Origin: Macrostomum lignano
Lineage: Eukaryota
Direction of reading: 5' to 3'
Length of the DNA stretch: 64,000 nucleotides
Assembly: GCA_002269645.1 (NCBI GenBank)
Contig: NIVC01000708.1
Span: 1 to 64,000 of the forward strand
The first letter of the stretch is position 1, and each line of letters opens with the position of its first letter. This document shows positions 5,672 to 53,500 of this stretch, piece by piece. The position numbers were made by a program, and so were the translations under genes. Below the pieces are notes generated by a model that saw only the letters and a list, made by a program, of their open reading frames with translations, was not told where the DNA came from and made no database searches.

Positions 5672-6852
<1,181 letters not shown>

Positions 6853-13174: not shown

Positions 13175-13254
<80 letters not shown>

Positions 13255-27081: not shown

Positions 27082-30000
27082 ATGGACGCCATCAAGAAGA
27101 AGATGCTGGTGATGAAGCTAGAGAAGGAGAATGCCGTTGACGCGTACGTGGTTTGCATGTTATTTTTTGCTTTTGAATCGTTCCACCAAGACGCAATGAT
27201 GAACAACTGTATTTTATTTACAAAATCATTTCAGGGCCGATCAGCTGGAGACCAAGCTGAAGGAGAAGGAGGCTGAGATGGCCAAGAAGGAAGAGGAGAT
27301 GGGCGAGATGCAGAAGAAGTTCCAGCAGCTGCAGCAGGATCTCGACACCGCCCAGGAGTCCCTCACCACCACCAACACCAATTTGGAGGGAACAGAGAAG
27401 CGAGCCAGCGATGTAAGTCCATTATATGTATAATCATTTTTGTGATGTTAAAGCCTTTTACCAGTGGCAAAACCAAAACTAATTAGCTCATGCATGTCAA
27501 GGACTACTTAAGTAGAAGGACTGTACACTCCAAAATCGTTGAAAATTTTTTGAAGGCCAAATTTTGCAATTGTGCCATGTCTGAACGGATTGATGAATCG
27601 GGCAGATTTTTGCTCAGGATATACAGTTACATATGTGCTCTTTCGATTGCTGCATGGCCTTTTATTTATTCCCCCCAGAATACGAAAGAATTGACTTTTT
27701 AGTACAGTACCCCGTAGATTGCATGCCTTTCAATGCAAAATCTTGACTTCTTTTTGGCAGTGGAAAGCAACACACACCACGTTTATTAACCAGTAAAAAA
27801 GTAATGCTCATAGTCAGTTCAATTAGCTAACCTTTTGACCTCTGACTTCGAGTCAGTGTAAGAAACAAGATGATTTTAAGGTCAGTTTTTTGTGACAAAG
27901 AAGGGAACAAAAAGTAGTATATTTATGGAAGGCAATTGGAAACAAATGAATGCTGAAAAATGTAGAAACAAAGAACATAAACTCATCGTAAACATCACCG
28001 GAAACAATTGCATTTCATAGATCAGTAAAAATAATATTGCTTGAAAAAAACATCAAAACACAATGAATTCGAACGAAAATGAGTACACAGAAGCATTAAA
28101 TACAGTATCGTAAATTGATTAGGCAGATTACAAAACTTAAAGAACAGACTGCTTTGAAGAATATATTTACCTATTCAGGGATTCTGTCACAACTGGGACT
28201 GGGCCACCATAATCCAGTGCTGGGCGTTAACTAGTTAATTGTTTAACTAGTTAATTAACTAGTTAAATTTTTAAAAAAATCGTTAAATTTTCGTTAAATT
28301 TTTTATGTATTAACTAGTTAACAAAAATCGTTAATTTTTTTCTGAAGTTAAAGTTAAATGACAAAAGTTAATAATTCCGGGAAATGGAGTTCCCCGGGTT
28401 CAAAATCCGCGGGTTTCAACAGCTTGTATGCCATTAAAAAGTAAAATTAATACATACATAAAATAACTTCGCCTTTCTAAGCATTATTTAACGCGTCACA
28501 AACTACTATTACATGTATATATTTCAGTTACAAGTTATAATGTATAGAATATTCCGGAAGATTCTGGAATCTTCAACTATTATCTATTGATATTCTACCC
28601 AAGCACTACTATAAGTTATCGTTGTACATAGGGATGTCGATTCCCCGGGGAATTTTCTTATCGGGGACCCGGGGAATTTACTGTCATTCCCCGGGGACCC
28701 CGGGGAAAAAATAAGTAAAAAACGGCGGATAACTTAGATCTTTATAAGTCACTAAGTGGCATTTTTTAAACTTTGATTAAAGCTTTGGATGGACTACATG
28801 TTCAAGGCGCAAGGGTAAAAACTTTAAGCAATGTTTGTTTAAAACTGTATTTGACAATATGGCATCACCAAATCGTGCGCGCACCTTTATCAGAAAGGGT
28901 CCAGACTCCGGAGGCGGAAAATGCATACTCAGCAGCTGCACTCGTGGGAGGATAATTAATGAATGAGACTGTTTTTATAATCGAAATTTTAATTTCTTGC
29001 AGATACAAATAAATCACCATTTTGTCCTGTCTAATACGGAGTATTTTGTTATTGTATGATACCCCCTATGCGTCAGTGACTGACGCAGGATATGGCGCTG
29101 TGCCTGCGTCAAATGTGTCAAGCCGTCAACGCAGACCAACACAATAGTCAGTAAGGCTTCTTTTTCCTGATGGGTTTCTACGCTCGTACGTTCAATTTGC
29201 TTGATTGAAAGACTCATAGTGAAAAAAACATTCAAACGGGTCGCTAATTTCATAAGACCGAAATTTCACAACGCCAAAAATTCTGCATGCAATACAATCC
29301 TTATTGTAAAGTTTTCTACGATGTGAAATTTCGGTCTTATGAAGTTTCGGTCTTGTGAAGTATGGTGTTTCGGCGTTGTGAATTTTGGTCTTATGAACCC
29401 CCCCCATTCAAACGTGTGTTGTGTTTGAAATAATACATTGAAATAAGCAGTTTTGCGGTAAAAAAGCATAGACAGAGTTTCAATCAGCTTTCTGTGAATA
29501 ATTTTCTTATTTAAATGGCAAAAATTTAGTTAAAAATGCTTTTTTTCTCCCCGGGGTCCCCGGTCTAATTCCCAGGGGAGTATTCCCCGACAAGCTCCCC
29601 AGGGCGCCGCGACCTGGCCACAGCCGCGCCGCGCCGACCTGAAATTTAAAAAAACACGCCGAACACATGTCCGGGAAAATGTCACTTTTTCCGTTAGGGA
29701 ATTATTAACTTTAACTTTTAACTTTTCAGAAGTTAAATTTTGGGCAAAAGTTAAATAATTAACTAGTTACAGTTAATTTTTTTGGAGCAATTAAATTAAC
29801 TTTTTAACTTTTAACGAGTTAAAAAAATTGATTAACTTGCCCAGCACTGCCATAATCCCATCCCACCTTAAATTTTAGTCTCAACGAGTGGAACTCCTCG
29901 TAACACTAAACGTATAGTAATACTCAGTTTGCACTTAAGAAACTCAATTCAACGCAATAAATAGACGTTATAAAACACCAGAAAAGTCATTTATATAGTA

Positions 30001-33000
30001 AAAATTAATGTTTTCCTGTCAAATTCATCCTCTATTATTCACTTATATACATGTGGAGTTGCTATCATATGAAAAAAATCGCTAAGCATAGCATCGTGAA
30101 TTTACCCATCAAAAATTATCCACTATTCCGGAGAGTTACGTCCTGTGTAACGAAGTGACTTCAGAGGTCCTTGATGCATGTACATGCAAAATGATCCGGA
30201 TTTTTATAGGCTTAACCAGACGTTCGAATCGGGACATATAATTTAGTCATCAAGAAATATTGTTTCCCTACGTTAAAATTTGTGTCTTTAGGGCTTATGG
30301 GGGGATGGCCCAGAATGAAAATGTAATACAAGAATCAGAGTTCGACAATTCTAAATGAGTTAAGTAGTTTACCAGACGTTCATCAATATTATATCAGAAA
30401 TTACTGAGGTGTACATATGCATTCAAGACGGCAAAAAGTGAACAAAATGCAAAATAATGAAATTGCTAGTAACTGTACCCTGGCATCTCGCGTAAGGCGT
30501 ATTAAAGAAGTACCCATTGCTAATAGACATCCATCGACGTCGGGTACGTCGGTGGAAGTCCAATTTTTTTACGGGGAAGTAATAGGACGGAAATATAAAA
30601 ATCTGCTACGGAGTTCAGATGAGCGATATTTGGTGCAAGTTCCATCCATTTAGTTTTACGCTTTGAAATTTGAATTAACAAACCAATATTTATAAAGGTG
30701 CTTGTATGCACATTTAAAAAATCTTTCAAAAATTCTTAAAACGAATAATATAACTTGGTCGATTCATGTCATTCTAACTGCTACTTAATGGCTTTAAAAG
30801 CCACTAAAGGTTGTTTTTTTGTTTTAAAGGCACTAAAAAATTTTCAAGCATTAAAATATTCCTAGAAACTGCGGAACAAGAATCAGCAATAAAAAAGTAG
30901 TAAAGTAGTAAAGAACGTTCTTTCCTAAATAATTATCCTTCTAAAACTTTCTTTATATAGTTATATAGCTTTGTGCTTATTTTAGCTATATCAGTTACAA
31001 TGACGACAAACAATAAGGAATCTGTTCTAGCTTCACTGAAGCAGAGAATGCAGGCACTGAAAAATGATCTGGATTCTGTTCAGGATGAACTTTCTACCAA
31101 AGGTGCTGAGCTAGAAAACGAAAAGAATCTGCGCACTCAGGTACTCTAAATATTTAATATTTACTGCTGAATTTTCTAGTACCAATTCTGCAATTTTTTT
31201 GTTTTAAAATTTAACTAAAACAGCAATTAGCAAGTATGCCTAATTGCTGATAACAAGACATTTTACATTTATTAGATAGCAATATTTTAATGTGGCAGTG
31301 CTTACGCTGGTCAAATAAGCTCGCTGGTACTATTCAATGAGTTGGTCACTATTTAGCTAGCATCTTACTCTTAGTATATAATAAAGTGCCCTAGGTTGGA
31401 TACCAATATTCTAAATATAACAGATATAGTGGCAAAGCTAGGATTTTGAAAAGGGGGATTACTTTAAGGGACAAAGTTTTAGACTGATTCAATAGTTTTT
31501 TTGCAATTTATGCTTAAAATATACATTTAAAAGGTACAAAAACCATGTTTTTAGGCTAAAAAACTTTACTTTGTTGAAATCAAAATAAAGCCAGCAGATA
31601 TCTGTCTTGACTAAGGTATTTTAGCCTTTAGGAACTAGGGTAGGGATTTGCTGAAATATCATTTAAAACATTTTATTAGTAATTTACAAGTGAAATGGGC
31701 CAATTTTTGGGAATTTTGCTAAGTCTAAGCCACTGTATTTTGCATTTTTTTTATCAAAAAACCTCATTTTTGTTTCTTATAACTCATCAAGATGGGGTGA
31801 TATATTCTTATATCCCCCCTGGCTCACTACTGCATAGATATCTAGACATCAATATAAATATATTGAATTCAAACTGATTAAAAATTGATGCCAAAAATTC
31901 AACTCATTTTAGTGCTACCTATATTAAGAGATATAATCATTTTTTGAAAAAATGATATACCATAAAAAATCTGTTTTTATGAATTAAAAGTTGTGATTTT
32001 TTAAAACAAAAATGCAAATAGTTTACTTTTGTTGTTTTATGAGGGGTGCTTATTAAGTTCCTAGAAAATGCAGCTTAAAATAGAAAATGTGCCTCCTTGC
32101 CATAGCTGACTTAATATGATAGGCAAGTGGCAATACAAGTCCAGTTTTGGCTAGGCAGCTTAGCTGCCACCTGCCTTTAGATGAATTAAAAATCTTAACA
32201 GTAAAACTAGGAAGAAAATTCCCCCCCCCACCTGTCAATTTTTTGCTACACTGGAACAGAGCAATATAGGCACACAAAATTCAAGAACATGGGCTAACTT
32301 TTTGTCGCACACCTTCTCAATCTTATCATTATTGAAGCTTGATAAGAAAAACCTGACATAGTTGCAAAAGGATGTCCATAGTCACCTATTGAAGGCGCCA
32401 ATGGGGTCCAAGTGATGACTAAATGCTCGTGAGACTAGCTGAAAGTGTCCAGAAATTAAGGCTTGCCCACTGTCAAGTCTTGATTGGTGAAACTCTAGAA
32501 ATTTGCATCAGGGTGTTCATAGTCACCTAGTGTCATCTGTTGAAGGTGCCAACGGCATCCAGGTGAAGACTAACTACTTGAGAGACCAGCTGAGGATACC
32601 TAGTAGTTGAGGCTTGCCCACTGTCAAGGTTTGATCAGCAAAACTAGAGAAATTAGTATCAGGATGTTCATAGTCACCTGGTGCCACCTGTTGAAGGTCT
32701 AGAAGCTTTGTCTCGGTGAAGGCCAGTGACCAACAAAGTCAGAGCTGATGCAGACACATGTGGTCAATGTGCTGATGAAATTTGGAGACTTGAAAAAGCT
32801 GCACTTTGGCACACAGGGGTGTACTGAATACACTGGTGCTTATGGGATAATCCAACCTTCTGGCAGAATAGTTGAATATCTCAACAGTCTGGAGGGCTGG
32901 CGACTTGATTCTTGTTTGAGAAGGTGTGCAACAAAAATTTAGCCTATGTTCTTGAATTTTGTGTGCCTGTGTTGCTCCATTCTGGTGCAGCAAAAAATTG

Positions 33001-34586
33001 TCAAAAAGGGGGGAATCCCCCCCCCTATTGGTAATTTTTACAGGCGGAAAATGGTTTGGTATTCCTACTGTTAATGGTGGAAGCCTCACTTACTATCCAA
33101 TGTTTGAAACAGCTTAATTGTAACATTTTGCCTAAAAATTAATGCATTTCCTTTAAATTTAATATATTTGTGATTTCATATTTATATACTTCAGGCCAGG
33201 GAGTTGGCATAGTAGGATCAGTTAATTTGTAAAGACTTGGCACATTTTATAAAGCTCATACAAATGAGCAAGTTTCCATGCCAATCATTGAAGCAACTGC
33301 AAATTTTGATTTAAATACTATTGTGTAAAGAATGCAGTTTTACCATACATATGTTGTAAATTAGCTTTCCAAATTTCAATCCACTCTAGTCATACTTGTT
33401 CTCTTATTTAAAAACTGATCCAGAATGCTTTATTGCTTCTATAAGACTATGAAATCAAGCCTTCAATTCAATGATTTTTTGTCTTTGTCAAAGCTGTGAA
33501 TATCTAAGATTTACTTAGAGATTAAGATGTGTATAAGATATATAAGATATTTTTACTGAATTTTATTCCAATACAGTATCAACTTTTATTCAATGCCCTT
33601 ATTATTAATCTGAATGGAATTTTGCTGGGTATAATGTAACTAGCATCTTATAATCTTGCTCATTTTTCCCTGTCTCAAGGCCGAGGCGGAGGTGCAGGCC
33701 CTCACCCGGCGCATCCGCCTGATTGAGGAGGACCTGGAGCAGACTGAGGGCCGCCTGCAGGAGGCCACGCAGAAGCTGGAGGAGGCCAGCAAGGCAGCTG
33801 ACGAGAGCGAGCGGTGAGCTGATTAGTTAATCAATACTTGCCAGTCGTTATGTCCTTACTACACTACTGAACAGGAATAAGTAGTATTTTTTAGCTTTTC
33901 ATGACTATTTTATATTCGCATGCCCATCGCGTGCCGTGCTTTTCGATTTCAGGCGGATGACAGAATTCAAAGTTCCCGTTGTACTTTTATTTAAATAATT
34001 GATTTCTGCTCTCTATTAGATCCCGCAAAGTGCTGGAGAGTCGCCAGAACGAGGACGAAGCCAGGCTGAGCTCGCTGGACCAGATGGTCAAGGAGGCCAC
34101 GGATGCGGCCAAAGAAGCTGAGAAAAGATACGAAGAGGTACAGAGAGGGCTTGATGGTATCCGTAAGATGCTTTTTATTTAGGCTCCGGATTTTGTGGGC
34201 CTAGTCTGTGGGAGTTGTTTTTGCCAGCAGGAAACACAGCAATTCATCAGTGTTGTTGGTAAAACGCTTAACTTCATGTTGTTTTTATTTTGTAGATGAA
34301 GTCATTCTGATAACCAAATTTCTGTAAACTTGTTCATTTTTTGGAACGTTTATCAACTTGCTAAATTATTTGTGTCATTCGCGTTTGTCCGGTGCTACTA
34401 TTGATCATTTTTTCCTTTAAACATTCATTCGCTTTTATATCCGATATACTCGTATGCTATCGAATATTCAGTATGTTTAGTTAAACATGCTTGATAGATA
34501 AATAGATTGATAGCAATAAACAAGACAGACTGACAAACAGACACTAAGACAGATAGGCAGACAGGCAGACAGACAGACAGATAGGC

Positions 34587-34625
<39 letters not shown>

Positions 34626-34658
34626 TAGGCAGACAGACAGACAGACAGACAGATAGGC

Positions 34659-34691
<33 letters not shown>

Positions 34692-34698
34692 CAAAGAA

Positions 34699-34735
<37 letters not shown>

Positions 34736-34770
34736 CAAAGACAGATAGACAGACAGACAAACAGATAGGC

Positions 34771-34813
<43 letters not shown>

Positions 34814-34826
34814 TAGGCAGACAGGC

Positions 34827-34873
<47 letters not shown>

Positions 34874-34906
34874 TAGGCAGGCAGGCAGACAGACAGACAG
34901 ATAGGC

Positions 34907-34945
<39 letters not shown>

Positions 34946-34978
34946 TAGGCAGACAGACAGACAGACAGACAGATAGGC

Positions 34979-35011
<33 letters not shown>

Positions 35012-35018
35012 CAAAGAA

Positions 35019-35055
<37 letters not shown>

Positions 35056-35090
35056 CAAAGACAGATAGACAGACAGACAAACAGATAGGC

Positions 35091-35129
<39 letters not shown>

Positions 35130-35142
35130 TAGGCAGACAGGC

Positions 35143-35189
<47 letters not shown>

Positions 35190-35202
35190 TAGGCAGACAG
35201 GC

Positions 35203-35243
<41 letters not shown>

Positions 35244-35246
35244 CAA

Positions 35247-35279
<33 letters not shown>

Positions 35280-38200
35280 GGCAGACAGACAGACAGAACA
35301 CACTGACGGAACCGCTGTCGCTGCCGCAGAGGCCGCAAGGTGCTGGAGACCCGCTCCATCGCTGACGAGGAGCGCGTCAATACACTGGAGGAGCAGCTCA
35401 AGGAGGCGAAGTTCATCGCAGAGGACGCGGACCGCAAATATGATGAGGCAGCCAGGAAGCTGGCCATCACCGAGGTGGACCTCGAGCGGGCCGAGTCCCG
35501 CCTGGAGGCGGCTGAGAGGTGCCCTTGGCATGCCCTGCGTGTCCCATTGAAGTGTTTTCAGTTTTTTTGACTGCATTTAAATCTTCGTCCTGTTGTGAAT
35601 GTTTTTGTCCAGAGACCTGTTCCAGGATATTTTGAGTTCTCAAAAACAAATTAGAGAATTTATAATAACTATTTACTAATTGCCCGTCTTGCTTGTATTT
35701 TCATGCTCGATTTCTATTTATGAACTGCAGATTTAAACTGTTATGATCCCAGTGCGAATATAAATCCTAAACTGACACTTGTGATCCCGATTTGAAAGTT
35801 AAAATCCCAACCTGGTGGCTGAAATCCTAATGTGACAACAATTATCCCAACCTGTCAGCTAAAATCCCAACCTGTCAGCTAAAAATCCCAATCTGACAGC
35901 TAAAATCCCAACGTGGCGGCTAAAATCCCAATCTGAAAGCTAAAATCCCAATCTGACAGCTAAAATCCCAACCTGGCGGCTAAAATCCCAATCTGACAGC
36001 TAAAATCCCAATCTGACAGCTAAAATCCCAACCTGGCGGCTAAAATCCCAATCTGACAACTAAAATCCCAGTATGAAGTCAGAAAAGTTTTTTAAAGTTT
36101 TTCGATATGCTTTTCGAGTTTTTTGGCATGAACGTTTTTTAAACAGGAGTCTTGCTTTTCTTTGTCGGGAATTGCTGTGTTTTTTAGAGAGCTAGAAGAT
36201 AGAACTAAGTAGAAGCATGAAGCTGTTCGGGTGCCAAGAACTATAGTGCCAGTGAATTTGAGTTGGTTTAAAAATTGTAATTATTAGGAGTGTAATCCTT
36301 ATTCTAGCGTTATCCTCTAACTCCGGCTTAGATGGGAGTTTTACTTCCCAGTACTGGCACATAAATAGTTTTAAACAGCTGGCAGGGTATATATTTATTA
36401 GTTGTTGCTAACCGCCAACCTGGGGGCCATGTCGTCATCAGGTCAACCGGAAGCTGCTTCTGACCGAAGCCCAGCTGGACAGGGCGGAGCAGAGGGCCGA
36501 GGCCGCTGAGCGCAAAGTCAAGGATCTGTCGGACGAGCTGCACTCTGTCGCTAACAGTCTAAAATCGCTTGAGCAGAGGGATGCCAAGGTTCTTAGTTTA
36601 CCTTTTTGGTTATTTTTAAGCGCCCATCATATTCATTATTCACGTTAACGATTCGATTATTTTATAATTTTATGTTTTTAACGCCATAAAGAATTTATGG
36701 AGGTTTAGTCAGTATTCACTACTCACAAGTAGCTAATTATTGTACAATAGGAAAAGTCTGTGTTTGCACGCTTGCGCATGGCATGGTTCAAGCCAATAAA
36801 TTAATCTGTCTATTCGTATGAACAATTACTATAAAGTTGCAATTGAAATCAACGATAAAGAAACTGTGCACTGAAAATGCAGCAAAATCCTGGAACTGGA
36901 AGAGGAGCTGCGCGTTGTTGGCAGCAACATGAAATCGTTGGAGATCTCAGAGCAGGAGGCGGCCCAGCGCGAGGAGTCTTACGAGGAAACTATCCGAGAT
37001 CTCTCCGAGCGTCTCAAGGCTGTAAGGGCTTAGATTGAATTGGATTTGCAATTAGATTGCAGTATGCCATAGTTGAACTACAATAAAAAGATAAGTCAAT
37101 TAGTTCAAAGCATTTTAAATTAATATTGGAGGAAATTAACGGTGTGTCTAGACTGTAAAATGTGCTGGAGGGGCAGGTGTGAGTACGTAGAAAAGTTTAG
37201 CGGGCTCTGGCTCTTATCTAGATTGACTAGCTAGAACGGGGTGGGTGTGGGGGGTAGGAAGGTTTAGCTAGCTCTGGCTCTTATCTAGATTGACTAGCTA
37301 GAATGGGGTGGGTGTGGGGGGTAGGAAGGTTTAGCTAGCTCTGGCTCTTATCTAGATTGACTAGCTAGAATGGGGTGGGTGTCGGGGGTAGAAAAGTTTA
37401 GCGGGCTCTGGCTCTTATCTAGATTGACTAGCTAGAACGGGGTGGGTGTTGGAGGGGTAGGAAAGTTTAGCGGGCTCTGGCTCTTATCTAGATTGACTAG
37501 CTAGAACGGGGTGGGTGTGGGGGGTAGGAAGGTTTAGCTAGCTCTGGCTCTTATCTAGATTGACTAGCTAGAATGGGGTGGGTGTGGGGGGTAGGAAGGT
37601 TTAGCTAGCTCTGGCTCTTATCTAGATTGACTAGCTAGAATGGGGTGGGTGTCGGGGGTAGAAAAGTTTAGCGGGCTCTGGCTCTTATCTATATTGACTA
37701 GCTAGAATGGGGTGGGTGTCAGGGGGGGTAGAAAAGTTTAGAGGGCTCCTGCTTTTATCTCGGTTGACTAAGCTAGAATGGGGTGGGTGTCGGGGGTAGA
37801 AAAGTTTAGCGGGCTCTGGCTCTTATCTAGATTGACTAGCTAGAACGGGGTGGGTGTTGGAGGGGTAGGAAAGTTTAGCGGGCTCTGGCTCTTATCTAGA
37901 TTGACTAGCTAGAACGGGGTGGGTGTGGGGGGTAGGAAGGTTTAGCTAGCTCTGGCTCTTATCTAGATTGACTAGCTAGAATGGGGTGGGTGTGGGGGGT
38001 AGGAAGGTTTAGCTAGCTCTGGCTCTTATCTAGATTGACTAGCTAGAATGGGGTGGGTGTCGGGGGTAGAAAAGTTTAGCGGGCTCTGGCTCTTATCTAT
38101 ATTGACTAGCTAGAATGGGGTGGGTGTCAGGGGGGGGGTAGAAAAGTTTAGAGGGCTCCTGCTTTTATCTCGGTTGACTAAGCTAGAATGGGGTGGGTGT

Positions 38201-41200
38201 CGGAGGGGTAGGAAAGTTTAGCTGGCTGGCTGAATTTTTTATATTGGCAGGCTAGAGTGAGTGGTTTAGCTAGAGTGGCTCTGGATTGAGGTGGGTGTCG
38301 AACGGGTTAGGTTCTAGATTATAGTTTATGCTACAAGGAGGCGATTTCGCTCAGTAATACGAAACTTATGTCGCATATTTTCATAGCCGCCAAAGCAGTC
38401 GTAAGCAAAACCAGTATTTTAGAAGAAACAGTCTCCAAAGCTTCGTCGTGTCGTTCTTCGTCGACTTGCATCGCATATTGCTGTAATTAACACACCGAGT
38501 GCCGTGCCCTCTTGTATAATTTGCAAAAATCCAAGCATTGCTTCTTTGAAACTTGAAGACCAAAGTTCAGTTCAGTTTGAACTATGCCTGCGTTTTATGC
38601 GTTCACTTAGGGGGGGGGGAGTATTTGAGTAAGAGTAGTTTGAAGCATGGCGTTTTTCATTACTTTATATTTACAAACTTTATGATTTTCATTATCCTTT
38701 TTTTGTAATTGTTAACATATCTTTTAAATATTGCAATGTCTTGTGCATGCCAGTTTGCTGCTCAGACATTCTGGTGACTGATTCCAACTCCACCAACCAA
38801 TCTTCAAACCAACTCCCATCTACTTTTCTCCATCCTCTCTACCCCATCCCTCTTGCCGCATCATTTCTACCTCAGTCCGTCCGCATGCCCTTGATCGCGA
38901 ACAGTCGCCCATTAGTTCAACTAACTGCCTGCCATCTTTGCAGTCTGCATCCAGAGAGGAGTCGTACGAGACTCAGATTAAGAGCCTGACCCGCCGGCTT
39001 GCCGAGGTAAATATTAATTTATATCTCCGTGAAATACTTGTTTTAACTGGGCCGCATGCTTTGTTCTGAGTCCAGATTAGTGCACGAGTATGCTTGCTGT
39101 GACTGTTGCTCCTGTTGCTCCTGCTTGCCCAACAATTTTTTTAACCTAATAACATGTGACGACACGACTGGCTGAAGTTGAGGAAGCAGCGGTGGAGTAG
39201 CGGCCAAATCGAATTCGGTTTTTCAATGGGAGTTTCGCTGGATCGCCTCTTTTATATTTGCTTCTAAAAATGATAGTGTTATTCAATTCACTCTACTAAG
39301 AAGAGTAGTTCTATTCCAATTTAAAGCTTTAGGTTTTTTAGATACAGAGATAAATATTACTTTAGGTAGGCTGTTAAATTGCGTGCATTCTGCCCAGCAG
39401 CTGCCAAACTGCATCGCAAAGAGTCACCCATAGATGGATCAAGAATTGTCCATAGATAGATCAATAATTACCCATAGACGGATCAAGAATTGCCCATAGA
39501 CAGATCTAGAATCACCCATAGACAGATCTAGAATCACCCATAGATAGATCAAGGATTATCCATAGGCAGCTCAAGAATTACCCATAGACAGAATAAGAAT
39601 CACCCATTCTTATTCTGTCTCAAAGGGATAGATTGAGAATCACCGATAGACAGATCAAGAATTATCCATAGATCGCTCAAGAATCACCCTCAGACAGAAT
39701 AAAAATCACCCATAGACAGGGCTACCCCATAGACAGATTGAGAATCACCCATAGACAGGGCTACCCCATAGACAGATTGAAAATCACCCATAGACAGATT
39801 GAGAATCACCCATAGACAGATTGAGAATCACCCATAGGCAGATTGAAAATCACCCATAGACAGATTGAGAATCACCCATAGACAGATTGAGAATCACCCA
39901 TAGACAGATTGAAAATCACCCATAGACAGATTGAGAATCACCCATAGACAGATTGAGAATCACCCATAGGCAGATTGAAAATCACCCATAGACAGATTGA
40001 GAATCACCCATAGGCAGATTGAAAATCACCCATAGACAGATTGAAAATCACCCATAGACAGATTGAGAATCACCCATAGACAGATTGAAAATCACCCATA
40101 GACAGATTGAGAATCACCCATAGGCAGATTGAAAGTCACCCATAGACAGATTGAGAATCACCCATAGACAGATTGAGAATCACCCATAGGCAGATTGAAA
40201 ATCACCCATAGACAGATTGAGAATCACCCATAGGCAGATTGAAAATCACCCATAGGCAGATTGAAAATCACCCATAGACAGATTGAGAATCACCCATAGA
40301 CAGATTGAAAATCACCCATAGACAGATTGAAAATCACCCATAGACAGATTGAGAATCACCCATAGACAGATTGAGAATCACCCATAGGCAGATTGAAAAT
40401 CACCCATAGACAGATTGAGAATCACCCATAGACAGATTGGAAATCACCTATAGACAGATTGAAAATCACCCATAGACAGATTGAGAATCACCCATAGACA
40501 GATTGAAAATCACCCATAGACAGATTGAGAATCACCCATAGGCAGATTGAAAGTCACCCATAGACAGATTGAGAATCACCCATAGACAGATTGAGAATCA
40601 CCCATAGGCAGATTGAAAATCACCCATAGACAGATTGAGAATCACCCATAGGCAGATTGAAAATCACCCATAGACAGATTGAAAATCACCCATAGACAGA
40701 TTGAGAATCACCCATAGACAGATTGAAAATCACCCATAGACAGATTGAGAATCACCCATAGACAGATTGGAAATCACCTATAGACAGCTATTGGGAATTA
40801 CTCACAGATTGAGGATCACCCATAGACAGATCAAGAAGTGCCCATAGACAGCTCACGAATTATCCTTGGACACGAATAAGTAATCTGAACACAAGTTGAA
40901 AACATCCTTTGCTATGCACTTTGGGATGTTGCTAAGGCAAAATACACGCAACTTGAGCAGACAGTAAGTACATTAAATTCTCTGACTAAATCCGGACACA
41001 ATCGTCACCCTCGATCGTGAGCTCAGGCTGAGCAGCGCGCTCAGGAGGCCGAGAGGCAGGTGTCCAAGCTGCAAAGCGAAGTGGACAGGCTGGAGGGTAT
41101 GTTACAGTATCTGTCATTGCTCACTGCGGTGCGGCCTCTCCGCTATCAGCATCGGCCGAGAAACGAACCGGACCTTTTGCCGCGGATGTTCTATTGCTCT

Positions 41201-43691
41201 GATTTTGTCAGCCCCAAATCTGTTTGCCTGTCCGTGTTTTGTCTGCCGTGTGGTTTTCAGTTCAGTTTGACGTGACCAGAACAAAGCATGCCGGCTGTTA
41301 ACAGAGTTTAGCAATAGCGCATGTGAATTTTATGAATAAGTTCTCGCTTTTTGTAAGGCTGAGGACCGAGCTGAGAAGGCGGAGCGCGAGTCTGTTAAGC
41401 ACCAGAAGGAGCTCGACAAGGCTGAGGGTGAGCAACTGCTTATTGATTCTCAGTTTGTGTTTGCAGTAGGGATGATGGAGTACAAGTGAGATGCAAGGGA
41501 TAGATTTGAGATTCAGTTGTAGAAGAAGGCACAGTGTAGAAGGAGGGAACAGAGGGGTAGAAGGGGGTCACAGAGGGGAGAAGGGGGGCACAGAGGGGTA
41601 GAAGGGGTCACAGAGGGGAGAAGGGGGGCACAGAGGGGTAGAAGGGGGTCACAGAGGGGAGAAGGGGACACAGAGGAGAAAAGGGAGACAGGGGGAGAAG
41701 GAGGCACAGACAGGAGAAGGGGACACAGAGGAGAAAAGGGAGACAGGGGGAGAAGGAGGCACAGACAGGAGAAGGAGACACAGAGGAGAAAAGGGAGACA
41801 GGGGGAGAAGGAGGCACAGACAGGAGAAGGGGACACAGAGGAGAAAAGGGAGACAGGGGGAGAAGGAGGCACAGACAGGAGAAGGGGACACAGAGGAGAA
41901 AAGGGAGACAGGGGGGGGAGGAGGCACAGACAGGAGAAGGGGACACAGAGGAGAAAAGGGAGACAGGGGGAGAAGGAGGCACAGACAGGAGAAGGGGACA
42001 CAGAGGAGAAAAGGGAGACAGGGGGAGAAGGAGGCACAGACAGGAGAAGGGGACACAGACCGAGTGGCGTCAACGTTTCCCCCATTCGCTCCGCAGAGCG
42101 CCTCCTGGAGGAGAAGCAGCGCAACGCCAGCCTCAAGCAGGAGATGGACAGCATGCTTGGCGAGTTCCAGAAGATCTAAAAGAGAATGGGAGACCCAGAG
42201 AGCTCCGTAGCAATAGAATGAGTTTACTGTTACAGAACACTGAAAACGTGGACCCAGCTGCTTGGGCACCCAAGTTTATTTATTAACAATTTATATATTT
42301 ATTAACATTGCACGGGTTTTCGTTAGTTTGCTGTTGTTGCATGGTCTGTTGCAACCGAGTTTGCACTTTTGGCCTGATCGAGCTTCGCTGATACGGCGCT
42401 TAGCAACAAGAGTGTGTTTTCCTTAGTTACGGATTGTTTCTTTACGGTCTCTCCGAGGCAGTAAGTTTTTTTCATTAATCGAACCCACAATCAATACGCG
42501 CTTGTTTTGCTACTAATAATAGCTTTGGCAGTAGTGTATTTGGAATTGTTTATTAATAAAATTTCTGATTGCATTGCTTCTGCCTTCTGCCTTTTTTGTC
42601 TACTAAAACTGCCTGGTGTTAATGCTGCTAGCCCGTGCTACCAATACTATCCGATTGAATTACCTTAGCCATCTATTTGATGCCAGATAGATCAAGTAAG
42701 CGCTTTTTCTCTTGCAAGTAGAATTCTTGCTAGTCTAAAACTCTGCACTGATGACATTTTTTCAATGAATGAATATAAAAATAGCAACGTACTCATCTTA
42801 CTACTGTCGCCGGTCTGTTCGAGTAGAGTTCAGTTCGGAAGCTTGCCCCACCCACTTCAGATCCGCTAAGCTTCATCAGCCAGCTTTTTGTTATAAATTA
42901 GCGTTATTATAGTCTATGCTATAGTTATTATTATTTGAACCAAATATAGTTATAGACAATTTTGCAGTTTCTATCGCTTTTCGCTACTGTCAGTAGCGGT
43001 TAGGAAATATTTTAATTTTAGGAAAATCAAGAACGGCCAGCTGCACGCTCTGTTTGTATTCCTGCGTATTATTATTATTATAATTACTACTGATAATCTT
43101 TCTGCGTTACTAACTGTTTATAATAAATAAACAATTTCTAATATTAAAAAAATATTGTCAATCTGCAATCTGCTTGTTTTTCAACAGTGAAAGGAGTTTG
43201 GCATGCTGAAAATTTTTTAATTGTGTTTTTTCCCTGCCGTTCAGTGACTTTGCTTTGTTCTGCATGCCGCCTTTGACAGCGTGGCCTGCATGGTTTTACA
43301 CAGTTTTTTGGCTTTCCCTGGGCTGACAAATCCGGTTCGTTTCCATGTAAAGTTACAAGGAGTGTCACAAATGCAGAAGTACACTGCTGTAACATTATGT
43401 ACAGTCATTAGAAATTCAGATCTATTATGGCTAAAAATGTACATTGCTTTGAAAATGTACAGTGCTGTAGGGACAGAAATCTATATTCAGTGGGTTAGAA
43501 AAGTACATTGGTCACAAAAGTACACAGCAAGTGCACTCGTACACCACCGCGCACTGAGCGCTACTGACAGTAGCAGCATGGGATTTCAATTCGTTGACAA
43601 ATCCGCAGACGAGCTGCTTTCGGAGAAGGACCGCTACAAAGGCATCAGCGAGGAGCTGGACCAGACCTTTGCCGAGCTCACTGGCTATTAA
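27082..43691 (+). CDS. TPM: Tropomyosin, 284-aa muscle-type (long) isoform
   Basis: Exons 27082-27143 and 27235-27412 (residues 1-80, [26 protein letters not shown]...), 33680-33813 ([12 protein letters not shown]...KAADESER), 35330-35518 ([15 protein letters not shown]...[23 protein letters not shown]), 36883-37021 ([46 protein letters not shown]), 41027-41096 ([23 protein letters not shown]), 43609-43691 ([27 protein letters not shown]). Sums to 284 aa with consistent phases. Confidence 0.93.
28215..29849. mobile_element. Non-autonomous hAT-type DNA transposon (1635 bp) in the tropomyosin intron between the two first exons
   Basis: Perfect 11-bp TIRs CAGTGCTGGGC...GCCCAGCACTG; 8-bp TSD CCATAATC at 28207-28214 and 29850-29857; GTTAA/TTAAC-rich subterminal arrays at both ends; internal inverted CCCCGGGGACCCCGGGGAAAA blocks near 28690 and 29545; no transposase ORF seen. 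Confidence 0.85.
29238..29404. mobile_element. Mini inverted-repeat element nested in the hAT element
   Basis: CATAAGACCGAAATTTCACAACGCC (29251) inverted against GGCGTTGTGAATTTTGGTCTTATG (ending about 29395); 9-bp direct repeat CATTCAAAC at 29229-29237 and 29405-29413; ends GGG...CCC. Confidence 0.6.
30962..30996 (+). promoter_or_regulatory. Candidate internal promoter (TATA plus TCAGTT initiator) or splice acceptor for the short tropomyosin first exon
   Basis: TATATA at 30962 and TCAGTT at 30991-30996, ATG at 31000. The 5'UTR would be only about 7 nt; a TTTTAG acceptor just upstream is an alternative explanation. Confidence 0.3.
31000..42179 (+). CDS. TPM: Tropomyosin, short cytoplasmic-type isoform built from the alternative exon set (251 aa)
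   Basis: Alternative first exon 31000-31140 ([25 protein letters not shown]...NLRTQ, 47 aa, absent from the ORF track), shared exon 33680-33813, then 34020-34137 ([16 protein letters not shown]...KRYEE), 36442-36588 ([23 protein letters not shown]...KSLEQRDAK), 38944-39006 ([21 protein letters not shown]), 41358-41427 ([23 protein letters not shown]), 42097-42179 ([27 protein letters not shown]). Every exon is in register with tropomyosin residues 81-284. This specific pairing of first and last exons is inferred. Confidence 0.8.
32237..32999. mobile_element. Foldback/MITE-like element with ~84-bp inverted arms and internal ~150-bp direct repeats
   Basis: 32237-32320 is the near-perfect reverse complement of 32916-32999. 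The interior has CATAGTCACCT at 32377, 32518 and 32669, and AGGCTTGCCCACTGTCAAG twice, 151 bp apart. Outer boundaries and TSD not resolved. Confidence 0.65.
34520..35296. repeat. (GACA)n tetranucleotide array
   Basis: Same motif as 5672-6852 on the opposite strand; lies between alternative tropomyosin exons 34020 and 35330. Confidence 0.95.
35845..36075. repeat. 20-bp minisatellite (AAAATCCCAATCTGACAGCT)
   Basis: Directly visible. Confidence 0.85.
37195..38222. repeat. ~65-bp G-rich minisatellite with a ~410-bp higher-order unit
   Basis: GCTCTGGCTCTTATCTAGATTGACTAGCTAGAATGGGGTGGGTGTGGGGGG units; the variant GAGGGCTCCTGCTTTT occurs at 37741 and 38151. Confidence 0.9.
39430..40850. repeat. 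22-bp minisatellite (CACCCATAGACAGATTGAGAAT)
   Basis: Homogeneous core with degenerate flanks. Confidence 0.95.
41545..42060. repeat. Purine-rich minisatellite (~21-bp then ~55-bp units)
   Basis: Directly visible, upstream of the acceptor at 42096. Confidence 0.85.
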
Positions 43692-44494
43692 GCAGCTCCG
43701 CCTGGTGGTCGCGGGTTCGAATCCTGCGCCTGACCTGCGCAACGAGGACAATCCTAAACTACAAGCAGTTTTCTTTTTTTCAATTTATCAATTTCTCTGT
43801 CGCTCTGTTTCACTCCTTTTTTTACTTTCTCAATTTCTCTCTCACCTCTGGGCAACAGGAGGGTGCGGTCGCGTGCCTCCTTGCACCAGTCTACTTTTTA
43901 TTAATAACACTACTACTACAAGTAGTCACTACAGCAATATCAATGACCGTACTAGTATGCACGCGTTATACATTTATAATTAAGTAATAATGGCGCTCGA
44001 CTCTGCTTCCGCTTTTTCAAGCCTCCTGAAACTGCAAACCCGAATACTCTTATTCAACTGTACCTGTAACAATTTTAGTTTCAGATTGTTTTACTGTAGT
44101 TTAGCGCTTGCCAATGTCTGCATGCAGTCAGCAGTAACTCAGAAATTATGCAACAGACTTTTTCAATAGAAAACTCTGCGCCCTGAGGTACCGTAAAAGT
44201 TTTCAAAAGTTACATTAGTAATTAAATTTATCTGTAAAGATCTGGACAGATTTAAATTAAATTATTTAACTTAAATAAATGCAATTTTTATCGAGCTAAT
44301 AATTATTAAAATATTAATAATAATTAATATGACTGCTAATTGCTACATTTTTTCTATATTTTCTGCAGCTGTTTCTGAGTTTCGATGGGTGCTTGTGATT
44401 TGAAAGTTTCTGAACATTTATTGAATATTCTTTCTGCTATGTGAATATTGGGAAATGCTATAGCTCCTACTAAACTCTCAATTATCTCTCACCG

Positions 44495-44995: not shown

Positions 44996-47900
44996 ATGTC
45001 CTTCAACGAGAATGTAAGTTTACATTTGTTCCTGTCATTAAGAGTCAGCAAAACGTACAAACAATGCCCATCGTTCCCTGATCTGTAATACAAAAACGGG
45101 AGACATGCAAAATCAGTCAATTAAGATAAGACGAACCATATATACTCGTTTTGCTCTGTTCGCCCAGGCCCGGCCATTCCTGACTCTCCACGTGGGTCAG
45201 GCTGGAGCACAGATCGGCAACGCGATTTGGGAGCTGCTCTGTCTTGAGCACAATGTTCAAAAAAGCGGCCTAGCCAAGCCCGACTGCCCTAGCAACGGTT
45301 TCTATGACGCAATGTTTGTACGCAATCAGAACGGCCATTTCATGCCCAGGTCGATCTTTTTAGATACGGATCCAACGTGTATTGGTAAGCATATGCTTTA
45401 GATTAGCGGCTTCTGTATCTCCTTCATTGCTGAAACTCTAATTTGGAAGCGGCCAATCAGAATCGGAGGGGTAGCTTGCGGAGTGAGGTGGGTGTCAACA
45501 GGGCAGACAGACCAGTTGAAAAGCAGCCAATCAGAATTTGAGTAACGGATTTTGTTGTCTTGAGTAGTCTCAACTGTTTTTCCGCAGACGAGATTCGAGT
45601 CGGGCCCTACAGGGAGTTGTTCAGCACCCGGCAGCTGCTCAGCGACAGCGCGGACTCTGGGTTCAACTACATGCGCGGCCGGCGCGACTTCCGCCGCAAC
45701 CTCCTGCCGGAAGCAGTTGAAAGGTTTCGCTGGCTCTCTGAGAAGTCGGATGTGACGCCGACCGCATTTCTTGTTCACAGCACCGGCGGCGGCACTGGCA
45801 GCGGCCTGTCGGTGTCCTACCTGGAGGAGCTAAGGTCCGAGTTCGATTCCCGTCTGCAGGTACTTGAGCTAAGCGTCAGCTCGGGCAACAGCGGCCTGCA
45901 GAGCACCTGCGAACTTGTCAACTCGATGCTATACTCATACGAGTCCAAGGACTACACTTCGTTGTCCTTCTCCGTCACCAACTCGGCCATGTTCAACTTG
46001 TGCAGGTCCGGCCTCAGCCTGTACGGTGGCGCCACCTTTGCCCATCTGAATCGCATGCTCGCCATGTGCTTCAGCAACCTGACCGTGATGGAGAGATTTC
46101 CAGGCACCATGATGTGCAACATTGCCAACATTTGCAGCAATGTACTGCCGTTTAAGTAAGTACTGCGACGGTCCGTTACTTGACAAATAGGGAATTCAGG
46201 ATGGTCAGGATGGGATGGTCAGGATGATCAGGATGGTCAGGATGGTCAGGATGGTCAGGATGGTCAGGATGGTCAGGATGGTCAGGATGGGATGGTCAGG
46301 ATGATCAGGATGGGATGGTCAGGATGGTCAGGATAGTCAGGATGGGATGGTCAGGATGATCAGGATGGTCAGGATGGGATGGTCAGGATGATCAGGATGG
46401 TCAGGATGGTCAGGATGGTCAGGATGGGATGGTCAGGATGGTCAGGATGGGATGGTCAGGATGATCAGGATGGTCAGGATGGTCAGGATGGTCAGAATGG
46501 GATGGTCAGGATGGTCAGGATGGTCAGGATGGTCAGGATGGGATGGTCAGGATGGTCAGGATGGTCAGGATGGGATGGTCAGGATGGTCAGGATGGGATG
46601 GTCAGGATGGTCAGGATGGTCAGGATGGTCAGGATGGGATGGTCAGGATGGTCAGGATAGTCAGGATGGGATGGTCAGGATGATCAGGATGGTTAGAATG
46701 GTCAGGATGGTCAGGATGGTCAGGATGGGATGGTCAGGATGGTCAGGATGGTCAGGATGGGATGGTCAGGATGGTCAGGATGGTCAGGATGGGATGGTCA
46801 GGATGATCAGGATGGTCAGGATGGTCAGAATGGGATGGTCAGGATGGTCAGGATGATCAGGATGGGATGGTCAGGATGGTCAGGATAGTCAGGATGGGAT
46901 GGTCAGGATGATCAGGATGATCAGGATGGTCAGGATGGTCAGGATGGTCAGGATGTTCAGGATGGGATTGTCAGGATGGTCAGGATGGTCAGGACGGTCA
47001 GGATGGGATGGTCAGGATGATCAGGATGGTCAGGATGGTCAGGATGGTTAGGATGGTCAGGATGGTCAGGATGGTCAGGATGGTCAGGATGGGATGGTCA
47101 GGATGGTCAGGATGGGATGGTCAGGATGATCAGGATGGTCAGGATGGTCAGGATGGTCAGGATGATCAGGATGGTCAGGATGATCAGGATGGTCAGGATG
47201 GTCAGGATGGTCAGGATGGTCAGGATGGGATGGTCAGGATGATCAGGATGGTCAGGATGATCAGGATGGTCAGGATGGTCAGGATGGGATGGTCAGGATG
47301 GTCAGGATGGTCAGGATGGTCAGGATGGAATGGTCAGGATGGTCAGGATGGTCAGGATGGTCAGGATGGTCAGGATGGGATGGTCAAGATGGTCAGGATA
47401 GTCAGGATGGGATGGTCAGGATGATCAGGATGGTCAGGATGGTCAGGATGGTCAGGATGGGATGGTCAGGATGGTCAGGATGGGATGGTCAGGATAGTCA
47501 GGATGGGATGGTCAGGATGGTCAGGATGGTCAGGATGGTCAGGATGGGATGGTCAGGATGATCAGGATGGTCAGGATGGGATGGTCAGGATGATCAGGAT
47601 GGTCAGGATGGTCAGGATGGTCAGGATGGTCAGGATGGGATGGTCAGGATGGTCAGGATGGGATGGTCAGGATGATCAGGATGGTCAGGATGGTCAGGAT
47701 GGTCAGAATGGGATGGTCAGGATGGTCAGGATGGTCAGGATGGTCAGGATGGGATGGTCAGGATGGTCAGGATGGTCAGGATGGGATGGTCAGGATGGTC
47801 AGGATGGGATGGTCAGGATGGGATGGTCAGGATGGTCAGGATGGTCAGGATGGTCAGGATGGGATGGTCAGGATGGTCAGGATAGTCAGGATGGGATGGT

Positions 47901-53300: not shown

Positions 53301-53500
53301 TGTATTATTTACCATATTCTAATTAGGATAGTTCATTTTTGTTTTAATGTGCAGAAGCTTCTAGGTAGGCCTATTTAAAATGTATGAATACATAGTATCT
53401 GCCACCAAAATCTTCAAATCTCATGAGACAATTGAAAAATGAAATATTTGGCGGGTGCAAAAAGCTTGCTACTTTGATTTCCAATTCATGCCCTCCCAAA

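What the first reader, a model, noticed from the sequence alone, without database searches (positions are those of the whole stretch)
27082..43691. Two almost complete tropomyosins interleaved in one locus, sharing only one exon
Seen: every segment except residues 81-125 (exon 33680-33813) exists in two versions. First exons: 27082 or 31000. Residues 126-234: track A 34020, 36442, 38944 or track B 35330, 36883. Residues 235-257: 41027 or 41358. Residues 258-284: 42097 or 43609. The genomic order alternates A,B,A,B,A. Track B is conserved and muscle-like (ending [10 protein letters not shown]); track A is strongly divergent. Established: animal tropomyosin genes use alternative first, last and some internal exons, but usually keep several constitutive exons. 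Inference: a whole-gene internal duplication retained as a splicing switch, giving up to 2x2x2x2 = 16 full-register isoforms.
Basis: partly seen in the sequence, partly recalled or inferred. Interest (0 to 1): 0.72.

Follow-up and report, generated by a model that had tools for sequence, protein, structure and literature searches.

The report
Flatworm tropomyosin gene with paired exons
This is a real tropomyosin gene in which every coding exon but one exists in two alternative versions, but that layout is already the documented standard for flatworm tropomyosin genes, so it is a new example of a known design.

Summary
All 13 claimed exons are on the + strand between 27082 and 43691, with AG/GT splice sites and compatible phases. 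A tropomyosin profile finds exactly these 13 pieces and nothing else in the window. They assemble into 284-aa (first exons 1a+2) and 251-aa (first exon 1b) tropomyosins that share only exon 3 (33680-33813).

The layout is six tandem pairs of single exons (4 to 9), not one whole-gene duplication. The same copy order (4A 4B | 5B 5A | 6A 6B | 7B 7A | 8B 8A | 9A 9B) occurs in Hymenolepis, Paragonimus and Schistosoma bovis loci. It is published for S. mansoni TpmII: 17 exons, one common exon, six mutually exclusive pairs.

The divergent "A" track is not decayed. It keeps the heptad pattern and scores 127 bits on Pfam Tropomyosin. It groups with the A tracks of other flatworms and aligns without gaps to an S. 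japonicum cDNA-derived 249-aa protein.

The local peculiarity is that three introns between neighbouring same-track exons are lost (4B+5B, 5A+6A, 6B+7B). Residues 126-234 are therefore all-A or all-B, because every hybrid shifts the frame or changes the length. Transcription in this species could not be tested. Interest is low to moderate.

The parts
27082..27143 (+). Exon 1a. Start codon, [20 protein letters not shown], then 2 nt of codon 21. Start of the high-molecular-weight (muscle-type) isoforms.
   Evidence: donor GTACGT; HMM E=1e-5. Hymenolepis has an intron at the same position.
27235..27412 (+). Exon 2, residues 21-80.
   Evidence: acceptor tttcag, donor GTAAGT; HMM E=2e-13. 54-58% identical to exon 2 of Hymenolepis and S. 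bovis tpm-2.
31000..31140 (+). Exon 1b. Alternative first coding exon of 47 residues that replaces residues 1-80 and gives 251-aa low-molecular-weight isoforms. An internal promoter upstream of it is inferred.
   Evidence: HMM E=2e-4. Aligns with the 1b part of the S. japonicum cDNA-derived protein P0221.
33680..33813 (+). Exon 3, residues 81-125. The only coding exon common to all isoforms.
   Evidence: HMM E=2.5e-20, with no second copy anywhere in the window. Equivalent to the 'common exon E' of S. mansoni TpmII.
34020..34137 (+). Exon 4A, residues 126-164, track A.
   Evidence: HMM E=9e-13. Same position before 4B as in L001, L002 and L003.
35330..35518 (+). Fused exon 4B+5B, residues 126-188, track B. 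The intron at 164/165 is lost.
   Evidence: HMM E=3e-27. 4B and 5B are separate exons in Hymenolepis, Paragonimus and S. bovis.
36442..36588 (+). Fused exon 5A+6A, residues 165-213, track A. The intron at 188/189 is lost.
   Evidence: weak donor GTTCTT; HMM E=2e-15. 5A and 6A are separate in Hymenolepis and S. bovis.
36883..37021 (+). Fused exon 6B+7B, residues 188-234, track B. The intron at 213/214 is lost.
   Evidence: HMM E=5e-21. 6B and 7B are separate in Hymenolepis and Paragonimus.
38944..39006 (+). Exon 7A, residues 214-234, track A.
   Evidence: HMM E=1e-3. Lies after 7B, as in Hymenolepis and Paragonimus.
41027..41096 (+). Exon 8, B type, residues 235-257.
   Evidence: HMM E=2.5e-8. 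87% identical to Paragonimus 8B.
41358..41427 (+). Exon 8, A type, residues 235-257.
   Evidence: HMM E=8e-7. Lies second in the pair, as in the parasites. Groups with the A exons in the exon 8-9 tree.
42097..42179 (+). Exon 9, A type, residues 258-284 (...[12 protein letters not shown]) plus the stop codon. Non-muscle type C-terminus. AATAAA at 42555.
   Evidence: The HMM match is weak (E=0.29), but it aligns without gaps to the C-terminus of the S. japonicum cDNA-derived protein...EMDTMINEFHSI.
43609..43691 (+). Exon 9, B type, residues 258-284 (...[11 protein letters not shown]) plus the stop codon. Muscle type C-terminus. ATTAAA/AATAAA at 44221-44305.
   Evidence: HMM E=2e-10. 67-78% identical to the parasites' 9B.

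Best explanation
This is a single tropomyosin gene of a flatworm. The species is not in the databases; the N-terminal exons are closest to tpm-2/TpmII of tapeworms and flukes.

It has the architecture typical of that phylum:
- two alternative starts (exons 1a+2, or exon 1b);
- one common exon (3);
- six tandem pairs of duplicated exons (4 to 9), used in a mutually exclusive way.

The main products are most likely two. One is a 284-aa muscle isoform (1a-2-3, then the B exons, ending AELTGY). The other is a 251-aa cytoskeletal isoform (1b-3, then the A exons, ending EFQKI). Some mixing is possible at exons 8 and 9.

In this lineage three ancestral introns that lay between neighbouring exons of the same track were lost, fusing 4B+5B, 5A+6A and 6B+7B. 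The fusions, together with mismatched intron phases, make residues 126-234 an all-A or all-B choice. Any hybrid shifts the frame or changes the length.

Shown: the exons, their phases, the frame logic, the conserved order, the orthology of the A track and its intact coiled-coil pattern.

Inferred: transcription in this species, the coupling of each promoter to one track, and the tissue distribution.
For: - Exon anatomy and frames.
- Exactly 13 tropomyosin-like pieces in the window.
- Only 8 of 256 forward exon paths give 284 aa, and none of them is an A/B hybrid within 126-234.
- Same copy order, with all introns present, in Hymenolepis weldensis (L001), Paragonimus heterotremus (L002) and S. 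bovis (L003).
- A block is Pfam Tropomyosin at 127 bits against a cut-off of 38.6.
- Heptad a/d positions are hydrophobic at 17/23 and 18/23 in A, against 19/23 and 19/23 in B.
- A exons have GC of 0.58-0.61, against 0.32-0.47 in most introns; the tandem-repeat-filled 8A/9A intron is 0.57.
- The A tracks of the window, Hymenolepis and Paragonimus or S. japonicum form one split in 94-100% of bootstraps, and window A never joins window B.
- S. japonicum cDNA-derived proteins AAM74948.1/CAX73344.1 (249 aa) and AAP06508.1 are 1b-3-all-A. They align over 239 residues without a gap to the window's predicted low-molecular-weight A isoform.
- Literature. S. mansoni TpmII has 17 exons A-Q, a common exon E, and tandem pairs F/G to P/Q that are about 50% identical and mutually exclusive, with 8 TpmII isoforms (12 across the four Tpm genes) detected by RT-PCR (PMC4026961). 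[quoted passage not shown] High-molecular-weight isoforms are the muscle forms in cestodes (PMC4015340 and PMC10614006).
Against: - No transcript data exist for this species.
- By raw identity, the window's A exons are closer to B exons (45%) than to other flatworms' A exons (32-39%). The A grouping in the trees could therefore be inflated by long-branch attraction.
- The S. mansoni data show several mixed isoforms, so a strict two-isoform model may be too simple.
- The donor of 5A+6A (GTTCTT) and several B acceptors have weak consensus.
Confidence: 0.85

Rival explanations
1. Free combinatorial switch. The four choice points (first exon, central block, exon 8, exon 9) are used independently, giving all 16 isoforms.
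For: All 16 combinations stay in frame. Nothing in the exon phases forbids 8A with 9B or 8B with 9A. S. mansoni TpmII yields at least 8 RT-PCR-detected isoforms, including pairs that differ only in the 3' exon.
Against: The published model and the cloned schistosome cDNAs pair 1b with the all-A exons and 1a with the all-B exons. 9A sits directly after 8A and has its own poly(A) signal, which favours 8A-9A as a unit. No data exist for this species.
Confidence: 0.2
2. The pairs arose independently in this lineage. This would be convergent exon duplication, which is common in tropomyosin genes, rather than inheritance from the flatworm ancestor.
For: Tropomyosin exon duplication is recurrent across bilaterians. 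The annelid Dimorphilus duplicates only exons 3 and 4. The window's A exons are more identical to B exons than to the parasites' A exons.
Against: The order of A and B copies is identical in all six pairs to three other flatworm loci. That has about a 1 in 64 chance if the orders were independent. The A tracks form one split in 94-100% of bootstraps in every partition. The flatworm-specific intron in codon 21 is shared.
Confidence: 0.07
3. The track A exons are decaying pseudo-exons and are never included in mRNA.
For: They are divergent. 9A is barely seen by a general tropomyosin profile (E=0.29). The 5A+6A donor is weak.
Against: All six A pieces are open and splice-competent in phase, with an intact heptad pattern and exon-like GC. 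The A block alone scores 127 bits on Pfam. Orthologous A exons are intact in cestodes and trematodes and are present in cloned cDNAs.
Confidence: 0.03
4. Assembly artefact: two paralogues or haplotypes were interleaved by mis-assembly in a repeat-rich region.
For: The introns are full of tandem arrays, which are error-prone to assemble.
Against: The same interleaving is present in three independent assemblies of other flatworms and in the published S. mansoni gene. A and B are only 30-58% identical, so they are not haplotypes. There is only one exon 3 and one of each first exon.
Confidence: 0.01

Closest known systems
Schistosoma mansoni TpmII (Smp_031770), and the tpm-1/tpm-2 genes of cestodes and trematodes
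   Same: Two alternative starts, one common exon (residues 81-125), and six tandem exon pairs covering residues 126-284. The order of A and B copies is the same. The intron in codon 21 is shared. The products are 284-aa muscle and roughly 250-aa non-muscle forms.
   Different: Three introns are lost here, so there are 13 coding exons instead of 17 and the central 109 residues form one locked two-way choice. The long alternative N-terminal exon is not detectable in the window. That exon is exon C by its position in the S. bovis orthologue, and is present at L001 9426-9620 and L003 4609-4803.
Vertebrate TPM1-4 genes
   Same: Two promoters (1a and 1b) give high- and low-molecular-weight forms. 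Exon boundaries at 80/81, 125/126, 164/165, 188/189, 213/214, 234/235 and 257/258 are shared; this rests on established knowledge of vertebrate TPM genes and is visible here and in the parasite loci. Both have muscle and non-muscle alternative last exons.
   Different: Vertebrates duplicate only exons 2, 6 and 9 and keep exons 3, 4, 5, 7 and 8 constitutive. Here only exon 3 is constitutive. The first intron lies in codon 21, not at 38/39.
Caenorhabditis elegans lev-11 and Drosophila Tm1
   Same: A single gene with two promoters and several sets of mutually exclusive exons that give tissue-specific isoforms (abstracts of PMC5921574 and PMC11702560, as listed).
   Different: Different subsets of exons are duplicated, and several exons stay constitutive. 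I did not compare these loci directly.
Dimorphilus gyrociliatus (annelid) tropomyosin gene
   Same: A lophotrochozoan tropomyosin with tandem duplicated exons and extensive intron loss.
   Different: Only exons 3 and 4 are duplicated. Exons 5 to 9 form a single exon with no alternatives.

Membership tests
Tropomyosin (Pfam PF00261) | Profile match above the curated cut-off | tested here: met
   HMW-B isoform 294.6 bits, LMW-A isoform 195.3 bits and the A block alone 127.3 bits, against a cut-off of 38.6.
Tropomyosin (Pfam PF00261) | Unbroken heptad repeat with hydrophobic a and d positions along the whole rod | tested here: met
   residues 126-284: A has 17/23 (a) and 18/23 (d); B has 19/23 and 19/23. 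The other five registers are at most 0.26. Exon 1b continues the register.
Tropomyosin (Pfam PF00261) | Canonical lengths (284 aa for the high-molecular-weight form, about 248 aa for the low-molecular-weight form) | tested here: met
   284 aa and 251 aa for all 16 combinations.
Tropomyosin (Pfam PF00261) | Binds along actin filaments as a head-to-tail polymer | not testable with these tools
   This needs biochemistry. Only the conserved N-terminus (MDAIKKKM) and the C-terminal motifs are visible.
Flatworm dual-isoform tropomyosin gene (SmTpmII / tpm-1, tpm-2 type) | A single common coding exon (residues 81-125) | tested here: met
   one copy only, at 33680-33813. 'common exon E' in S. mansoni.
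Flatworm dual-isoform tropomyosin gene (SmTpmII / tpm-1, tpm-2 type) | Six tandem pairs of duplicated exons covering residues 126-284 | tested here: met
   both versions of exons 4 to 9 are present and are 30-58% identical to each other. Three junctions are fused.
Flatworm dual-isoform tropomyosin gene (SmTpmII / tpm-1, tpm-2 type) | Copy order 4A 4B 5B 5A 6A 6B 7B 7A 8B 8A 9A 9B | tested here: met
   the window's order matches the complete order in Hymenolepis (L001). Paragonimus (L002) and S. bovis (L003) agree for every exon detected (5A not found in L002; 7B, 7A and 8A not found in L003).
Flatworm dual-isoform tropomyosin gene (SmTpmII / tpm-1, tpm-2 type) | Alternative first exons 1a+2 and 1b, with the 1a/2 intron in codon 21 | tested here: met
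Flatworm dual-isoform tropomyosin gene (SmTpmII / tpm-1, tpm-2 type) | Third, long alternative N-terminal exon between exon 2 and exon 1b | tested here: not met
   tblastn, motif and HMM searches of the whole window were negative (best E=2, on the wrong strand). This exon is seen in tpm-2 loci (L001, L003) but was not detected in the tpm-1 locus L002 either, so it may not be a defining feature.
Flatworm dual-isoform tropomyosin gene (SmTpmII / tpm-1, tpm-2 type) | Mutually exclusive use of the pairs in mRNA | not testable with these tools
   No transcripts of this species are available. It is shown in S. mansoni and in S. japonicum cDNAs. Frame logic enforces it here for residues 126-234 and for the exon 8 pair, with one exception: 7A included after 6B+7B stays in frame, giving 305 aa.
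Vertebrate-type TPM gene | Mutually exclusive exons 2a/2b and 6a/6b, with exons 3, 4, 5, 7 and 8 constitutive | tested here: not met
   there is no second exon 2, and exons 4, 5, 7 and 8 are all duplicated.

The most novel reading that the evidence does not exclude
The three fused exons are splice choices written back into the genome. Intron loss could only remove introns that lie between genomic neighbours spliced together in one isoform. That points to reverse-transcribed, isoform-specific mRNA recombining with the gene. This turned four independent mutually exclusive pairs (exons 4 to 7) into one hard-wired two-state block. The locus would then be an intermediate on the road to splitting into separate muscle and cytoskeletal genes, which, as I recall from a paper not held here, has been reported for planarians.
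Probability: 0.4. Interest if true: 0.4.

Novelty: new member of a known kind. Interest (0 to 1): 0.25.

Why it matters
It adds one more, apparently unsampled, flatworm lineage to a textbook case of 'internal paralogy', in which one gene does the work of a muscle and a cytoskeletal tropomyosin through paired exons. The useful points are practical and evolutionary.

- Automatic gene models routinely string these alternative exons together into false 370-440-aa 'tropomyosins', as seen in several public flatworm annotations. This locus needs isoform-aware annotation.
- The same-track exon fusions show how intron loss can lock coordinated exon choice into the DNA, which makes the coupling of distant splice choices testable.

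It does not change what is known about tropomyosin function.

Tried and rejected
- **Extra exons.** tblastn with permissive settings gave only low-complexity noise. The HMM scan showed no further tropomyosin pieces on either strand.
- **Long alternative N-terminal exon.** This exon is present in the parasite tpm-2 loci, in an annelid and a nemertean, and in arthropod and tardigrade proteins. tblastn, regular expressions and a dedicated HMM were all negative.
- **Transcript evidence for this species.** No protein more than 79% identical (best local alignment) was found in the two homology searches.
- **Species identification.** A search with the neighbouring phosphodiesterase exon gave a best hit of 61%, which is uninformative.
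- **RNA 'docking/selector' pairings** that could enforce mutual exclusion. The inverted-repeat scan of 33600-43800 gave 10 pairs. One is a 16-nt pair linking the region downstream of 4B+5B to the start of 6B+7B. My back-of-envelope estimate is that a 16-nt pair of that quality should occur by chance about a dozen times in 10 kb, and I did not estimate the longer pairs, so I draw no conclusion.
- **First tree**. Two outgroup tails were misaligned, so I discarded it and repeated the analysis. One bootstrap script timed out.
- **Papers.** Irimia et al. 2010 (MBE) and Koziol et al. 2011 (MBP) are not held. What I say about the Koziol paper rests on my memory of its abstract.
- **Lineus locus.** It is not on record.
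Full report
**1. What is there**

The + strand between 27082 and 43691 carries 13 coding exons of a tropomyosin gene.

| Exon | Coordinates | Notes |
|---|---|---|
| 1a | 27082-27143 | first coding exon of the long form |
| 2 | 27235-27412 | |
| 1b | 31000-31140 | alternative first coding exon |
| 3 | 33680-33813 | common exon |
| 4A | 34020-34137 | track A |
| 4B+5B | 35330-35518 | track B, fused |
| 5A+6A | 36442-36588 | track A, fused |
| 6B+7B | 36883-37021 | track B, fused |
| 7A | 38944-39006 | track A |
| 8 (B type) | 41027-41096 | |
| 8 (A type) | 41358-41427 | |
| 9 (A type) | 42097-42179 | stop included |
| 9 (B type) | 43609-43691 | stop included |

All internal exons have AG acceptors and GT donors, and the phases fit. 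Eight give 284 aa (start 1a+2) and eight give 251 aa (start 1b).

A tropomyosin HMM was run against every stop-to-stop fragment of both strands. It finds these 13 pieces and nothing else (E from 3e-27 to 0.29, next best E above 2). Exon 3 is therefore the only shared coding exon, and there is no third version of anything.

Exon GC is 0.42-0.70. Most introns are 0.32-0.47, and one repeat-filled intron is 0.57. Poly(A) signals follow both last exons.

**2. Is track A alive?**

- The A block alone (159 aa) matches Pfam Tropomyosin at 127 bits, against a cut-off of 38.6, and in the correct register.
- Its a and d heptad positions are hydrophobic at 17/23 and 18/23, against 19/23 and 19/23 for B. 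All other registers are at most 0.26.
- The predicted 1b-3-all-A protein aligns over 239 residues to a 249-aa Schistosoma japonicum protein known from cloned cDNAs (AAM74948.1, CAX73344.1). Identity is 40%, positives 66%, and there is not a single gap. Both end at the same C-terminal motif.
- A second cDNA clone (AAP06508.1) has the same composition.

The A path is therefore a conserved, expressed isoform in at least one relative. I could not test expression in this species.

**3. What the arrangement really is**

Many public flatworm gene models of 370-440 aa turned out to be alternative exons strung in series. That pointed to the same structure elsewhere. I fetched three loci and mapped the exons: Hymenolepis weldensis tpm-2, Paragonimus heterotremus tpm-1 and Schistosoma bovis tpm-2.

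Hymenolepis shows the complete order 1a, 2, (long N-terminal exon), 1b, 3, 4A, 4B, 5B, 5A, 6A, 6B, 7B, 7A, 8B, 8A, 9A, 9B. The other two loci agree for every exon detected. Each exon from 4 to 9 is thus a side-by-side tandem pair.

The window has the identical order. However, 4B+5B, 5A+6A and 6B+7B are single exons here. The boundaries 164/165, 188/189 and 213/214 are present in the parasites and, from established knowledge, in vertebrate TPM genes. They are therefore ancestral, and the window has lost three introns.

Only introns between neighbouring exons of the same track could be lost without destroying the alternatives, and three of the four such introns are gone. The 8A/9A intron remains. 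It also argues against one whole-gene duplication, which would give a block of A followed by a block of B.

**4. Orthology of the tracks**

| Comparison | Identity |
|---|---|
| Window B vs parasite B | 75-84% |
| Window A vs parasite A | 32-39% |
| Window A vs window B or parasite B | about 45% |

By raw identity, then, A looks no closer to other A exons than to B exons. Neighbour-joining trees tell a different story. With annelid, mollusc, nemertean and tardigrade sequences included, the A tracks of the window, Hymenolepis and Paragonimus or S. japonicum fall on one split. Support is 94-100% of bootstraps, whether exons 4-9, 4-8, 4-7 or 8-9 are used. Window A never joins window B.

Long-branch attraction could inflate this. 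The identical copy order in six pairs (about 1 in 64 by chance) points the same way independently.

The annelid Dimorphilus duplicates only exons 3 and 4 and has exons 5-9 as one exon. This agrees with the published view that tropomyosin exon duplications recur independently in different phyla (PMC3342872).

In the first tree the A tracks also grouped with a vertebrate TPM4 isoform that carries the non-muscle last exon. I regard that as unresolved.

**5. How it most likely works**

I enumerated all 256 forward exon paths from exon 3 to either last exon.
- Only 38 keep the frame.
- Only 8 give 284 aa. These are (all-A or all-B central block) x (8A or 8B) x (9A or 9B).
- 4A followed by 4B+5B, 4B+5B followed by 5A+6A, 5A+6A followed by 6B+7B, and 8B followed by 8A all shift the frame. 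Double inclusion or track switching there would yield premature stops. Their removal by nonsense-mediated decay is an inference.
- The only frame-preserving error within the block is 7A after 6B+7B, which adds 21 aa.

Within residues 126-234 the gene is therefore a two-state switch fixed in the DNA.

Coupling of 1a to B and of 1b to A is inferred, not shown here. It rests on three things:
- the schistosome cDNAs;
- the muscle restriction of high-molecular-weight isoforms in cestodes (PMC4015340 and PMC10614006);
- the published model in which each duplicate is assigned to one promoter isoform.

S. mansoni TpmII shows at least 8 RT-PCR-detected isoforms (12 across the four Tpm genes), including forms that differ only in the last exon. 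Some mixing at exons 8 and 9 is therefore plausible here too. I found no convincing intronic RNA pairings that could act as selector elements.

**6. Comparison with what is known, and novelty**

Silas et al. 2014 (PMC4026961) describe S. mansoni TpmII as follows:
- 17 exons, A to Q;
- one common exon, E;
- tandem pairs F/G, H/I, J/K, L/M, N/O and P/Q;
- pairs about 50% identical and never used together.

That is this architecture. From memory, the abstract of Koziol et al. 2011 (Mol Biochem Parasitol 175:181) states the same for cestode and trematode tpm-1 and tpm-2, and says that isoforms of one gene share only one exon. That paper is not in the library, so I could not verify the wording.

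What is particular to this locus is modest:
- the three same-track exon fusions;
- the absence of the long alternative N-terminal exon found in the parasite tpm-2 loci;
- its origin in a flatworm lineage not represented in the protein databases.

**7. Verdict**

This is a new member of a known kind. Interest is low to moderate.

Noticed in passing
window 34523-35297, 35800-36070, 37187-38227, 39419-40862, 41570-42059: Five of the introns between the alternative exons are largely filled by tandem arrays: (AGAC)n of 775 bp, a 20-bp unit x13.5, a 67-bp unit x15, a 22-bp unit x66 and a 55-bp unit x9. Similar arrays, including the same AGAC/GTCT family at about 5500-6900, fill much of the rest of the window.
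   Followed up: partly
window 22774-23124 (+): An exon of a cyclic-nucleotide phosphodiesterase (Pfam PDEase_I, 103 bits) lies upstream of the tropomyosin gene. The closest database proteins are only about 61% identical, so the species and its near relatives seem absent from the protein collection.
   Followed up: partly
window 45560-46159 and 48432-50381 (+): A divergent tubulin-family gene lies directly downstream. The Tubulin GTPase domain and the Tubulin_C domain sit in two long ORFs, separated by about 2.3 kb of a repeat that reads MVRMVRM/GWSGWSG. A long non-tubulin C-terminal extension follows.
   Followed up: partly
window 53423-53878 and 55827-56021 (+): A syntaxin-like gene, with a Syntaxin_2 domain and a SNARE domain in separate exons. 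A tandem repeat lies between them, read on the opposite strand as a long repetitive ORF (54044-55186).
   Followed up: partly
L001 9426-9620; L003 4609-4803; proteins P0001, P0003, P0005, P0009, P0038, P0031, P0050: A third alternative N-terminal exon (motifs LFSDYG and LNSGTLIKLAIIGxELxN, ending ...LRK just before exon 3). It is conserved from flatworms to an annelid and a nemertean, and in shorter form in a centipede and a tardigrade. It is absent from this window. Several public models splice it in after exon 2.
   Followed up: partly
proteins P0010, P0011, P0021, P0024, P0027, P0101, P0121, P0122, P0123, P0142, P0007: Public gene models of flatworm tropomyosins, and one mollusc-like model, are 319-437 aa because mutually exclusive exons were concatenated in series, sometimes with translated intron between them. 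These are annotation errors that mask the real isoforms.
   Followed up: yes
L003 9224-10931 versus 10939-14010: In the S. bovis contig the exon group 5A-6A-6B appears twice in tandem with identical peptides. This is either a local assembly duplication or a very recent real one.
   Followed up: no
L004 11417-11551 and 11599-11730; 11925-12038 and 12198-12314: The compact Dimorphilus gyrociliatus tropomyosin gene has tandem duplicates of exon 3 and of exon 4 only. In flatworms exon 3 is the one exon that is not duplicated.
   Followed up: partly
protein P0162 (marine transcript collection): A non-flatworm-looking low-molecular-weight tropomyosin fragment joins a 1b-type start to an exon 4 that resembles the window's 4A (...MVKEVSEAANESERKYE). 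This hints that an A-like exon 4 tied to the internal promoter may be older than the flatworms.
   Followed up: no
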